In this document: one piece after another, positions 2,989 to 5,890 of the stretch | Layout of the letters: each line of letters opens with the position of its first letter | Position numbering within the stretch: the first letter of the stretch is position 1 | From: Octopus sinensis | Taxonomy: Eukaryota | Direction: 5' to 3' | DNA: 18,862 bases | NCBI RefSeq assembly: GCF_006345805.1 | Contig: NW_021824451.1 | Span: 1-18,862 of the forward strand | Translations under genes and position numbers: made by a program | The notes under the pieces: model-generated | What the model saw: the letters and a program-made list of their open reading frames with translations, nothing else | What the model was told of the DNA's origin: nothing | Database searches by the model: none

Positions 2989-3330
2989 CACACACACATA
3001 TATATATGTGCGTGTTGGTGTGTGAATATATATATTATATATAATATCCGTAATAATGAAGGGTGAAATTATTAATTTGGAAAAATTATCAATTACACCA
3101 AGTAGTCTTCGCATGTAAAGCCTCATTCGAGGAAAATTTAAGTAATACTAAGCAATAAGGGTTTAGCAACGAGTTGCCTTACCACATACCGAATTTAGAA
3201 ATAGCAGTCAAAGGGTTATAGCTATTTCTTCTACTAACAAGGGAGATCTCCAGTAAAAACAGCATTTGGAAGGCAGACACAAACAGGTAAGAGAATGAAT
3301 TGACTGCAATCTATCATACATTTTTTTTAG

Positions 3331-3452
3331 TATCCCACGACGTACGTTTCGAAATCAAGTTTTTAGGAAAGCATAAGAATTCAATATTAAATATTAAATA
3401 ATTCTAATAATTCGACTTACCGAAACTTCTTCTTTTCTCTCAGCGTAGAATA
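3331..3452 (-). ncRNA. Type I hammerhead ribozyme motif, unit 1 (degenerate)
   Basis: The core reads CTGAGAG (one base missing from CTGAAGAG) and stem I' is shifted (GTC|GTGGGATA). This copy is either inactive or carries sequence errors. Confidence 0.5.
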
Positions 3453-3944
3453 CTATAATCATAAATGATTATATATTGAATTTTGAGATACCAGAAGGCA
3501 CCAACTCAACTCAGTATCAGAGCGAGCTAGAATCCGCAACTGATATCACACCGAATCATTTGTGAATGAAACGATTGTGTCAACAGCCCCTTCCACCCCG
3601 CGTGTAGCCAAAACAAGATGCTGTGTCATCTACTGAGATAAAATATGGTTATCCGTAATAATGAAGGGTGAAATTAATTAATTTGGAAAAATTATCAATT
3701 ACACCCAAGTAGTCTTCGGCATGTAAAAGCCCATTCGAGGAAAATTTAAGTAATACTAAGCAATAAGGGTTTAGCAACGATTGCCTTGCCTTACCACATA
3801 CCGAATTTAGAATATAGCAGTCAAAGGGTTATAGCTATTTCTTCTACTAAAAAGGGAGATCTCAGTAAAAACAGCATTTGGAAGGCAGACACAAACAGGT
3901 AAGAGAGAATGAATTGACTGCAATCTATCATACAATTTTTTAGT

Positions 3945-4056
3945 TATCCACGGACGTACGTTTCGAAATCAAGTTTTTTAGGAAAGCATAAGAATTAAAT
4001 ATTAAATATTAAATAATTCTATCTTACCGAAACTCTTTTCTCTTCAGCGTATAATA
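3945..4056 (-). ncRNA. Type I hammerhead ribozyme motif, unit 2
   Basis: Minus strand: TATTATACG-CTGAAGA-G…C-GAAAC-GTAC-GTC^CGTGGATA. There is one mismatch in stem I. Predicted cleavage is between 3953 and 3952. Confidence 0.75.
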
Positions 4057-4540
4057 CTATAATCATAAATGATTATATATTGAATTTTGAGATACCAGAA
4101 GGCACCAACACTCAACTCATACAGAAGCGAGCTAGAATCCGCAACTGATATCACCGAATTCAATTTGTGAATGAAACGATTGTGTCAACAGCCCCTTCCC
4201 CCCGCGTGTAGCCAAAACAAGATGCTGTGGTCCTCTACTGAGATAAAATATGGTTATCCGTAATAATGAAGGGTGAAATTATTAATTTGGAAAAATATCA
4301 ATTACACCAAGTAGTCTTCGGCATGTAAAAGCCTCATTCGAGGAAAATTTAAGTAATACTAAGCAATAAGGTTTAGCAACGAGTTGCCTTACCACATACC
4401 GAATTTAGAAATAGCAGTCAAAGGGTTTAGCTATTTCTTCTACTAAAAAGGGAGATCTCAGTAAAAACAGCATTTGGAAGGCAGACACAAACAGGTAAGA
4501 GAGAATGAATTGACTGCAATCTATCATACATTTTTTTAGT

Positions 4541-4650
4541 TATCCACGGACGTACGTTTCGAAATCAGTTTTTAGGAAAGCATAAGAATTAAATATTAAA
4601 TATTAATAATTCTATCTTACCGAAACTTCTTTTCTCTTCAGCGTAGAATA
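4541..4650 (-). ncRNA. Type I hammerhead ribozyme motif, unit 3 (intact)
   Basis: Minus strand: TATTCTACG-CTGAAGA-[G…74-nt stem II…C]-GAAAC-GTAC-GTC^CGTGGATA. Stem I TCTACG/CGTGGA pairs (one G-U) and extends past a bulge. Predicted cleavage is between 4549 and 4548. Confidence 0.85.
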
Positions 4651-5130
4651 CTATAATCATAAATGATTATATTGAATTTTGAGATACCAGAAGGGCACCA
4701 ACTCACTCAGTATCAGGCGAGCTAGAATCCGCAACTGATCTCACCGAATTCAATTTGTGAATGAAACGATTGTGTCAAACAGCCCTTCCCCCCGCGTGTA
4801 GCCAAAACAAGATGCTGTGGTCATCTACTGAGATAAAATATGGTTATCCGTAATAATGAAGGGTGAAATTAATATTTGGAAAATTATCAATTACACAAGT
4901 AGTCTTCGGCATGTAAAAGCCTCATTCGAGGAAAATTTAAGTAATACTAAGCAATAAGGGTTTAGCAACGAGTTGCCTTACCACATACCGAATTTAGAAA
5001 TAGCAGTCAAAGGTTATGCTATTTCTCTTCTTCTACTAAAAAGGGAGATCTCAGTAAAAACAGCATTTGGAAGGCAGACACAAACAGGTAGAAGAATAAT
5101 TGACTGCAATCTATCATACATTTTTTTAGT

Positions 5131-5240
5131 TATCCACGGACGTACGTTTCGAAATCAAGTTTTTTAGAAAGCATAAGAATTAATATTAAATATTAAATAA
5201 TCTATCTTACCGAAACTTCTTTTCTCTTCAGCGTAGAATA
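5131..5240 (-). ncRNA. Type I hammerhead ribozyme motif, unit 4 (intact)
   Basis: Same core and stems as unit 3. Predicted cleavage is between 5139 and 5138. Confidence 0.85.
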
Positions 5241-5619
5241 CTATAATCATAAATTATATATATTGAATTTTGAGATACCAGAAGGCACCATCAACTCAGT
5301 TCAGAGCGAGCTAGAATCCGCAACTGATATCCACCGAATTCAATTTGTGAATGAAATTGTGTCAACAGCCCCTTCCCACCCGCGTGTAGCCAAAACAAAT
5401 GCTGTGGTCATCTACTGAATAAAATATGGTTATCCGTAATAATGAGGGTGAAATTAATTAATTTGGAAAATTATCAATTACCCCAAGTAGTCTTCGGCAT
5501 GTAAAAGCCCATTCGAGGAAATTTAAGTAATACTAAGCAATAAGGGTTTAGCAAACGATTTGCCTTACCACATACCGAATTTAGAAAATCGCAGTCAAAG
5601 GGTTATAGCTATTTCTATA

Positions 5620-5890
5620 AAGTTTCGGTAAGATAGAATTATTTAATATTTAATATTTAATTCTTATGCTTTCCTAAAAACTGATTTCGAAACGTACGTC
5701 CGTGGATATAAAAAAAAACTGTATGATAGATTGCAGTCAATTCATTCTCTCTACCTGTTTGTGTCTGCCTTCCAAATGCTGTTTTTACTGAGATCTCCCT
5801 TTTTAGTAGAAGAAATAGCTAAAACCCTTTGACTGCTATTTCTAAATTCGGTATGTGGTAAGGCAACTCGTTGCTAACCCCTTATTGCTT
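5620..5890 (+). mobile_element. Inverted, truncated partial copy of the tandem unit (unit positions ~380 to ~105)
   Basis: AAGTTTCGGTAAGATAGAATT…CGAAACGTACGTCCGTGGATA…CTTATTGCTT is the reverse complement of the unit. It contains only the 3' half of the hammerhead and lacks CTGAAGA. Confidence 0.92.

What the first reader, a model, noticed from the sequence alone, without database searches (positions are those of the whole stretch)
3045..5890. Hidden self-cleaving retroelement: ~600-bp tandem units, each with a minus-strand hammerhead ribozyme
Seen in sequence: what looks like a plain satellite has every hammerhead core nucleotide on the minus strand of units 2-4: stem I TCTACG, CTGAAGA, G…C-closed stem II, GAAAC-GTAC-GTC, CGTGGA. 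Established: Penelope-like elements and metazoan non-LTR retrozymes occur as tandem repeats carrying type I hammerheads, and cleavage of multimeric transcripts gives monomers that can circularise. Inference: a minus-strand transcript would be cut at 5139, 4549 and 3953 into ~590-596 nt monomers, larger than the ~150-400 nt metazoan retrozymes I know. This would be a non-coding ribozyme/circRNA retroelement family mobilised by a Penelope-like RT. I cannot tell whether it is already described in cephalopods.
Basis: partly seen in the sequence, partly recalled or inferred. Interest (0 to 1): 0.92.

Follow-up and report, generated by a model that had tools for sequence, protein, structure and literature searches.

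The report
Hammerhead-ribozyme tandem retroelement (retrozyme-like)
A non-coding ~595-bp repeat inserted in a TA microsatellite carries a complete type I hammerhead ribozyme in each intact unit. It has the layout of animal "retrozymes"/Penelope-derived repeats, so it is a real but already known kind of element, with an unusually long ribozyme stem II.

Summary
Window 3045-5616 holds about 4.3 head-to-tail units (590, 596 and 614 bp plus two partial units). Three units carry a complete type I hammerhead on the minus strand, with C17 at exactly 5139, 4549 and 3953. A fourth copy (C17 at 3339) has a broken core.

Chance is unlikely: 0.7% of dinucleotide-shuffled windows and 0.02% of shuffled units contain such a motif. 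Rfam's Hammerhead_1 aligns over its full length to all three copies. It scores only 18 bits against a gathering score of 34, because helix II holds a 70-72 nt insertion, so a whole-window scan misses it.

Helix III (ACGUACGU) is palindromic. The unconstrained minimum-energy fold of a transcript spanning two units is the classical double hammerhead.

The layout fits one target-primed insertion by Penelope-like machinery: both outer ends lie in (TA)n, the two arms meet head-to-head, and a 17-bp repeat flanks the insert. No RT or GIY-YIG coding sequence lies in the window.

Verdict: a non-LTR retrozyme / pLTR-derived element, a new member of a known kind. Catalysis, circular RNA and other genomic copies could not be tested. 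The host was not identified. Moderate interest.

The parts
3045..5616 (-). Head-to-tail array of ~4.3 non-coding units of ~595 bp (hammerhead sense = minus strand). The unit nearest 5616 is 5'-truncated. The 3' end at 3045 abuts (TA)n.
   Evidence: GC is 0.35. No ORF of 70 aa or more is listed inside it.
5133..5237 (-). Intact type I hammerhead, C17 = 5139. Helix I is 6 bp and helix II is 74 nt.
   Evidence: Rfam RF00163 17.9 bits, model 1-45.
4543..4647 (-). Intact type I hammerhead, C17 = 4549.
   Evidence: Rfam RF00163 18.0 bits, E 0.046.
3947..4053 (-). Type I hammerhead with an intact core, C17 = 3953. Helix I carries one A.G mismatch (UAUACG/CGUGGA). Helix II is 76 nt.
   Evidence: Rfam RF00163 17.9 bits.
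3333..3449 (-). Degenerate hammerhead copy (homologous C17 = 3339). The core reads CUGAGAG, the helix I 3' strand reads GUGGGA, and helix II has an 8-nt insertion.
5620..5890 (+). Inverted, 5'-truncated partial unit (hammerhead sense = plus strand). It holds only the 3' half of the ribozyme (GAAACGUACGUC^CGUGGA, C17 = 5700). Its 3' end at 5890 abuts (TA)n.
5617..5619 (.). About 3 nt of filler (ATA; boundary uncertain by 2 nt) at the head-to-head junction of the two arms.
   Evidence: read against the unit alignment.
3027..3043 (+). Left copy of the 17-bp direct repeat TATATATATTATATATA (candidate target-site duplication).
   Evidence: The same 17-mer occurs 9 more times in the window's TA microsatellites, so this is suggestive only.
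5891..5907 (+). Right copy of the 17-bp direct repeat, starting immediately after the insert.

Best explanation
The region is one insertion of a non-coding, non-autonomous retroelement of the animal non-LTR retrozyme / Penelope pLTR-derived kind.

Proposed mechanism (mostly inferred):
1. The array is transcribed on the minus strand into a multimeric RNA.
2. Each unit carries a type I hammerhead whose helix III is only 2 bp plus a GUAC loop, so a single motif is weak.
3. The octamer ACGUACGU is self-complementary. Two neighbouring hammerheads therefore pair into a double hammerhead, with an 8-bp shared helix III and swapped helix I strands.
4. [quoted passage not shown]
5. A host RtcB-type ligase can close these monomers into circles. 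In the monomeric circle the ribozyme is largely off.
6. A Penelope-like RT/GIY-YIG enzyme supplied in trans nicks AT-rich DNA and copies a circular or multimeric template from both target strands. That would give several tandem units plus an inverted 5'-truncated arm inside a (TA)n microsatellite.

Shown here: the motif, the repeat structure, the layout and the predicted folds. Inferred: transcription, cleavage, circularisation and the identity of the mobilising enzyme.
For: (1) All invariant hammerhead positions are present in three copies: C3 U4 G5 A6 N7 G8 A9, G10.1-C11.1, G12 A13 A14, A15.1-U16.1 and C17. The motif occurs nowhere else on either strand of the window. The chance rate is 0.7% per shuffled window and 0.02% per shuffled unit.
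(2) Rfam Hammerhead_1 (RF00163) aligns over its full length (model 1-45) at all three sites with ~18 bits and E ~0.05. It is the best hit among 4227 families. The alignment shows one local insertion of 70-72 nt inside helix II.
(3) The geometry equals the canonical metazoan type I motif: helix I is 6 bp followed by an internal loop and 4 more bp, helix II is 4 bp (GAAA/UUUC) before its first internal loop, and helix III is 2 bp plus a 4-nt palindromic loop (definition in PMC4209133).
(4) RNAcofold of two 105-nt motifs gives a double hammerhead at -42.2 kcal/mol, against -29.8 for two separate monomers. The unconstrained minimum-energy fold of the natural 711-nt transcript 5245-4535(-) is that same double hammerhead.
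(5) The circular monomer folds better than shuffles on the hammerhead strand (z = -4.2 and -2.5). The other strand is weaker (-2.4 and -1.25). Retrozyme circles are described as highly self-paired (PMC7761336).
(6) Layout: both outer ends lie in TA microsatellite, the two arms are joined head-to-head with ~3 nt of filler, and a 17-bp repeat flanks the insert. PLE insertions are described as partial tandems with an adjacent inverted 5'-truncated copy and a (TA)n bias (PMC8557442). A purified PLE protein cuts AT-rich DNA at 5'-ATT-3' and extends both strands (PMC11167929). With cDNA primed from both target 3'-OH ends, the template RNA must be hammerhead-sense in both arms (inference).
(7) The element is non-coding and non-autonomous. 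No ORF of 70 aa or more is listed in the array. No Pfam family matches any stop-free segment of 40 aa or more elsewhere in the window.
Against: - The Rfam gathering score is not met (18 versus 34 bits). Whole-window and 4-kb scans report nothing.
- A 74-76 nt helix II is atypical, and added stem length can reduce hammerhead activity (PMC3088659).
- The isolated 105-132 nt motif is no more stable than shuffles (z 0.1 to 1.0).
- No copy outside this window could be retrieved, so family-level conservation and covariation are untested.
- Within the array the motif decays like its surroundings: one copy is broken and one has a helix I mismatch.
- The 17-bp flanking repeat is low-complexity and recurs elsewhere in the window.
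- For one purified PLE, hammerhead cleavage was not needed for insertion in vitro (PMC11167929).
Confidence: 0.72

Rival explanations
1. Dead relic. The unit descends from a hammerhead-bearing retroelement, but the ribozyme no longer works, for example because of the 70-nt expansion of helix II. The array now persists only as inert or DNA-level satellite sequence.
For: - The Rfam score is about half the gathering score because of the helix II insertion.
- The motif's folding energy is not better than shuffles.
- One of four copies is broken and one is mismatched.
- Units differ by 3-8% plus indels, so the insertion is not very recent.
Against: - Every invariant core position is intact in three copies and in the half-copy of the inverted arm.
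- The extension starts exactly after the canonical 4-bp helix II and is itself a hairpin, so the core geometry is kept.
- The dimeric transcript folds into the double hammerhead without constraints.
Confidence: 0.18
2. Solo pseudo-LTR array of an autonomous Penelope-like element. The units would be the terminal non-coding region of a coding PLE whose ORF was lost or never copied (extreme 5' truncation or partial tandems), not an independent non-autonomous family.
For: - PLE hammerheads lie in pLTRs, and PLE insertions form partial tandems with inverted truncated copies (PMC8557442).
- Retrozyme consensus sequences match pLTRs of PLEs in Xenopus.
Against: - More than four consecutive units have no ORF between them.
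- No RT or GIY-YIG remnant lies anywhere in the 18.9-kb window.
- The distinction from a retrozyme is partly semantic.
Confidence: 0.2
3. Plain satellite DNA in which a hammerhead-like string arose by chance and was multiplied by unequal crossing-over.
For: - The three hits are copies of one ancestral sequence, so they count as one event.
- No external copies were found.
Against: - The chance rate is 0.02% per shuffled unit.
- Features not in my descriptor are also present: a fully palindromic helix III, the 6-bp/4-bp helix geometry, G10.1-C11.1 and a full-length Rfam alignment.
- The inverted arm and the TA-target layout are not produced by unequal crossing-over.
Confidence: 0.04

Closest known systems
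Metazoan non-LTR retrozymes (Cervera & de la Pena 2020, PMC7229834; Li, Clavereau & Pollet 2026 preprint, 10.64898/2026.07.22.740005)
   Same: - Head-to-tail, non-coding, low-GC repeats with one type I hammerhead per unit.
- A weak palindromic helix III that implies dimeric cleavage.
- A self-paired monomer RNA.
- No LTR.
- Presumed mobilisation in trans by Penelope-like elements.
   Different: - The unit (~595 bp) is above the 150-450 bp range of the 2020 study, though inside the 51-972 bp range of the 2026 preprint.
- Helix II is 74-76 nt instead of about 4 bp plus a loop, so Rfam's gathering score is missed.
- Expression and circular RNA were not shown here.
Newt/salamander satellite 2 and the axolotl HHR_Amex1/HHR_Amex2 hammerheads
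   Same: - Tandem repeats with a type I hammerhead.
- Helix III of 1-2 bp capped by a palindromic tetraloop.
- Efficient cleavage only as double hammerheads in multimeric transcripts.
   Different: - Those units are ~330-350 bp.
- Their helix II is short, with loop 1/loop 2 tertiary contacts.
- They have been verified experimentally.
[quoted passage not shown]
   Same: - Type I topology, G10.1-C11.1 and a palindromic 15.2-16.2/loop 3.
- A larger than usual helix II.
- Tandem or inverted arrangements.
- Insertion into AT-rich or (TA)n targets with an inverted 5'-truncated copy (PMC8557442).
   Different: - PLE 'min-HHRs' usually lack helix III altogether and have a helix II of 6-8 bp.
- They flank an RT/GIY-YIG ORF, which is absent here.
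Rfam RF00163 Hammerhead_1
   Same: - Full-length alignment (model 1-45).
- Core identical to the consensus.
- Helix III ACGUACGU against consensus ACGcgCGU.
   Different: - Scores 18 bits against a gathering score of 34, because 70-72 nt replace the model's 10-nt helix II interior.
- Standard annotation would not report it.

Membership tests
Hammerhead ribozyme, type I (Rfam RF00163) | Invariant core C3 U4 G5 A6 N7 G8 A9 / G12 A13 A14 / A15.1-U16.1 / H17 | tested here: met
   CUGAAGA ... GAA-A...U-C is present at three sites, with C17 at 5139, 4549 and 3953. The copy at 3339 fails (CUGAGAG).
Hammerhead ribozyme, type I (Rfam RF00163) | Three helices around the core: helix I open, helices II and III closed, G10.1-C11.1 closing pair | tested here: met
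   Helix I is 6 bp (4 bp contiguous, 5 of 6 positions paired, in the 3953 copy). Helix II starts with GAAA/UUUC, beginning with G-C. Helix III is AC/GU plus a GUAC loop.
Hammerhead ribozyme, type I (Rfam RF00163) | Score at or above Rfam's gathering score (34 bits) | tested here: not met
   No hit at the gathering score, and none at E<=10 on 4 kb. The score is 17.9-18.0 bits with E ~0.05 on ~141-nt sub-windows. The deficit comes from the 70-72 nt insertion in helix II.
Hammerhead ribozyme, type I (Rfam RF00163) | Covariation or compensatory changes in the helices among homologues | not testable with these tools
   No copies outside the window could be retrieved. The in-window copies differ mainly by indels.
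Hammerhead ribozyme, type I (Rfam RF00163) | Site-specific self-cleavage 3' of H17 | not testable with these tools
   Needs in vitro transcription of monomer and dimer constructs.
Metazoan non-LTR retrozyme | Head-to-tail tandem repeats, each unit with a type I hammerhead on the same strand | tested here: met
   About 4.3 units. Three hammerheads are intact and one is decayed.
Metazoan non-LTR retrozyme | Non-coding, low GC (<45-50%), no LTRs | tested here: met
   GC is 0.35. No ORF of 70 aa or more is listed in the array. The only repeats are the units themselves. PBS and PPT motifs were not searched for.
Metazoan non-LTR retrozyme | Unit size in the reported range | tested here: met
   590-614 bp. 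This is outside the 150-450 bp range of PMC7229834 but inside the 51-972 bp range of the 2026 preprint.
Metazoan non-LTR retrozyme | Expressed as monomeric linear and circular RNA | not testable with these tools
   No transcriptome data were available. Only predicted folds were obtained.
Metazoan non-LTR retrozyme | Dispersed multi-copy family with target-site duplications | tested here: inconclusive
   There is one locus only. A 17-bp flanking direct repeat is present, but it is low-complexity and recurs elsewhere in the window.
Penelope-like element (autonomous) | ORF with a telomerase-like RT and a GIY-YIG endonuclease | tested here: not met
   No Pfam family matches any stop-free segment of 40 aa or more in six frames outside the array. 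The ten ORFs tested gave only weak HTH hits. A motif regex found nothing convincing.
Penelope-like element (autonomous) | Insertion signature: partial tandems, adjacent inverted 5'-truncated copy, AT-rich/(TA)n target | tested here: met
   compared with PMC8557442 and PMC11167929.

The most novel reading that the evidence does not exclude
The 70-nt hairpin replacing loop 2 is a functional module rather than junk. It might be a binding or priming site for the mobilising RT, or a switch that tunes dimer-dependent cleavage. If so, it would define a lineage of large (~600 nt) retrozymes that Rfam-based annotation systematically misses, possibly abundant in an under-surveyed invertebrate group.
Probability: 0.2. 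Interest if true: 0.55.

Novelty: new member of a known kind. Interest (0 to 1): 0.35.

Why it matters
Hammerhead-bearing tandem repeats are a source of abundant small circular RNAs in animals, and their link to Penelope-like elements is still being worked out. This locus adds two modest points.

First, a hammerhead with a perfect core can sit at about half the Rfam gathering score because loop 2 has grown into a 70-nt hairpin. Genome annotations may therefore undercount such elements.

Second, one insertion preserves the whole layout: a tandem arm and an inverted arm, both ending in (TA)n, with a short filler between them. This is what is expected if an enzyme primes cDNA synthesis from both target strands on a hammerhead-sense circular or multimeric RNA, as shown biochemically for a lizard PLE.

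Neither point changes the current picture. Both are directly testable.

Tried and rejected
- TRF found no ~600-bp period because its maximum period is 500. The repeat finder and blastn were used instead.
- Rfam at the gathering score on the whole window, and at E<=10 on 4 kb, gave no hammerhead, only spurious miRNA hits in TA repeats. The hit appeared only in ~141-nt sub-windows.
- Exact 21-mers from the ribozyme and from the most conserved block of the unit found nothing: viral contigs, metagenome contigs (two scans) and genome contigs all returned 0.
- I queried a chimera of all long stop-free translations of the unit against 5.8 billion proteins, hoping for spurious ORFs called on related repeats. 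Nothing scored.
- To identify the organism, I queried a chimera of the HTH-ORF and a possibly LINE-like ORF (no homologue or Pfam hit supported that guess). It gave one anonymous ENA metagenome protein on a 637-bp contig. The host stays unknown.
- A full-text search for the ribozyme's sequence strings returned only an unrelated bacterial paper.
- The folding-energy z-score of the isolated motif is uninformative (0.1 to 1.0) because helix II is AU-rich.
- Conservation of the core relative to the rest of the unit within the array was considered and dropped. Four to five neutrally decaying copies give no statistical power.
- An alternative short helix II (GAAA-AGAAG-UUUC) was rejected because no GAAA follows it.
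- ARAGORN found no tRNA-like sequences in the window.
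Full report
**1. What is in the sequence**

The window is AT-rich (GC about 0.28-0.47) and full of microsatellites, which is typical of an animal genome. TRF did not report the feature because its longest period is 500.

The repeat finder, blastn of one unit against the window and a MAFFT alignment show a head-to-tail array at 3045-5616. 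Read on the minus strand it consists of:
- a 5'-truncated unit (5616-5139, ~477 nt);
- three full units, 5138-4549 (590 nt), 4548-3953 (596 nt) and 3952-3339 (614 nt);
- a 3' partial unit (3338-3045, 293 nt).

Units are 92-97% identical ignoring gaps and differ by many 1-nt indels. The unit occurs nowhere else in the window.

It is joined head-to-head to the array through about 3 nt of filler.

**2. The hammerhead motif**

The minus strand reads UCUACG-CUGAAGA-G[74-76 nt]C-GAA-AC GUAC GU-C^CGUGGA.

- All invariant positions are present: C3-A9, G10.1-C11.1, G12-A14, A15.1-U16.1 and C17.
- The 3953 copy has one A.G mismatch in helix I.
- The copy at 3339 is broken (CUGAGAG; GUGGGA; an 8-nt insertion in helix II).
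- The inverted arm keeps only the 3' half of the motif, with C17 at 5700 on the plus strand.

**3. Is it more than chance?**

My own descriptor finds only these three sites on either strand. It hits 0.7% of 1000 dinucleotide shuffles of the window, 0.1% at the observed helix lengths, and 0.02% of 5000 shuffled units.

Rfam gives nothing at the gathering score on the window and nothing at E<=10 on 4 kb. Searching ~141-nt pieces changes this. The best hit among 4227 families at each of the three sites is Hammerhead_1 (RF00163). It aligns over the full model (1-45) with 17.9-18.0 bits and E about 0.05, and it shows a single 70-72 nt local insertion inside helix II.

The gathering score (34 bits) is not met. 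By Rfam's criterion this is not an annotated member, although every defining nucleotide is there.

**4. Anatomy compared with the literature**

Cervera & de la Pena (PMC4209133) define the canonical metazoan type I hammerhead as follows: helix I of 6 bp, helix II of 4 bp, and helix III of 1-2 bp capped by a 2-4 nt palindromic loop. It is inefficient alone and active as a dimer in tandem repeats.

This motif matches that definition:
- Helix I is 6 bp, followed by a 2x2 internal loop and 4 further pairs (UAGU/ACUA).
- Helix II begins with exactly 4 bp (GAAA/UUUC), followed by an internal loop.
- Helix III is 2 bp plus GUAC, and the octamer ACGUACGU is fully self-complementary.

The difference is that the position of loop 2 is occupied by an imperfect AU-rich hairpin of about 66 nt.

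**5. Predicted folds**

- The isolated motif adopts the hammerhead topology in the minimum-energy fold, but it is no more stable than shuffles (z 0.1 to 1.0).
- Two motifs co-fold into a double hammerhead, with an intermolecular 8-bp helix III and swapped helix I strands. The energy is -42.2 kcal/mol, against -29.8 for two monomers.
- The unconstrained minimum-energy fold of the natural 711-nt transcript spanning two adjacent ribozymes (5245-4535, minus strand) is this same double hammerhead.
- The circularised monomer is more stable than shuffles on the hammerhead strand (z = -4.2 and -2.5). The complementary strand is weaker (-2.4 and -1.25). This agrees with the self-paired circles described for retrozymes (PMC7761336).

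**6. Evidence for retrotransposition rather than satellite expansion**

- Both outer ends of the composite lie in TA microsatellite.
- The 17-mer TATATATATTATATATA directly abuts both ends (3027-3043 and 5891-5907). It is a candidate target-site duplication. The same 17-mer recurs nine more times in the window's TA repeats, so I count it only as suggestive.
- The two arms point outward with their 3' ends and meet at 5'-truncated ends.
- The arms end at different unit positions, about 100 nt apart. This is possible on a circular or multimeric template.

The literature describes the same pattern. PLE insertions are partial tandems, often with an inverted 5'-truncated copy at the upstream end and a (TA)n bias (PMC8557442). 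A purified lizard PLE protein cuts AT-rich DNA at 5'-ATT-3', extends both strands and starts reverse transcription internally on the RNA (PMC11167929).

If cDNA is primed from the 3'-OH of each target strand, the template must have been hammerhead-sense in both arms. This is an inference, but it independently points to the minus strand of the array as the RNA strand.

**7. Coding capacity and neighbourhood**

- No ORF of 70 aa or more is listed inside the array.
- None of the ten ORFs tested matched RT or GIY-YIG domains.
- All stop-free segments of 40 aa or more outside the array, in six frames, gave no Pfam family at E<=0.01.

The element is therefore non-autonomous, and no mobilising enzyme is encoded within 18.9 kb.

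**8. What could not be done**

- No related copy was found in viral, metagenome or prokaryote genome collections, or among predicted proteins.
- The host could not be identified. 'Cephalopod' is therefore unverified.
- In the literature I searched, the only cephalopod statement is 235 Rfam Hammerhead_1 hits in the giant squid genome, listed without analysis (PMC6962438).

**9. Comparison and novelty**

Functionally and structurally this is a metazoan non-LTR retrozyme / PLE pLTR-derived repeat (PMC7229834; PMC7761336; preprint 10.64898/2026.07.22.740005).

The unit is larger than 150-400 nt, but the 2026 preprint reports consensus lengths of 51-972 bp, averaging 650 bp in ray-finned fish.

The distinctive features are the 74-76 nt helix II, which hides the motif from standard Rfam annotation, and the well-preserved two-armed insertion. 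I rate it a new member of a known kind.

**10. Verdict**

- Confidence that this is a genuine hammerhead-bearing retroelement insertion: about 0.72.
- Confidence that the ribozyme is active as a dimer: about 0.55.
- No step had to be referred.

Noticed in passing
window 6407-6745 (+): A 112-aa ORF with a weak helix-turn-helix match (Pfam HTH_7, E 3e-4, below cut-off). In a joint query with the 17585-17884 ORF, the single hit was a 192-aa protein from an ENA metagenome contig (51% identity over 38% of the query). By eye that hit aligns to this ORF. It looks like the N-terminal remnant of a DNA transposase. The rest is missing, and TA repeats follow at 6900-7068.
   Followed up: partly
window 8613-8989, 12863-13082, 14836-14949, 15031-15449, 16993-17156: One family of dispersed short repeats, 72-93% identical, in both orientations. 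They are SINE-like by size and dispersion, but ARAGORN finds no tRNA-like head.
   Followed up: partly
window 9038-9550, 10477-10835, 16311-16486, 17882-18025: A second family of ~100-170 bp dispersed or locally tandem repeats, 72-90% identical, in both orientations.
   Followed up: no
window 13821-14017 and 18059-18254: A pair of ~197-bp direct repeats, 91% identical and 4.2 kb apart. Their nature is unknown.
   Followed up: no
window 17366-17678: A ~313-bp stretch that is 81% identical to its own reverse complement, centred near 17522. This is two repeat copies head-to-head, with ORFs mirrored on both strands.
   Followed up: no
window 711-1109, 1428-1915, 12193-12724, 13221-13564: Very long microsatellites: (ATGT)~100, (CATA)~126, (TCA)~178 and (TATG)~86. 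There are also long (TA)n tracts at 5891-6205 and 7765-8162. They create long spurious ORFs and spurious miRNA hits in Rfam.
   Followed up: no
window 3045-5890: Most differences between units are 1-nt length changes in homopolymer runs. These could be real decay or long-read assembly error. This matters for whether the 3339 hammerhead copy is really broken.
   Followed up: no
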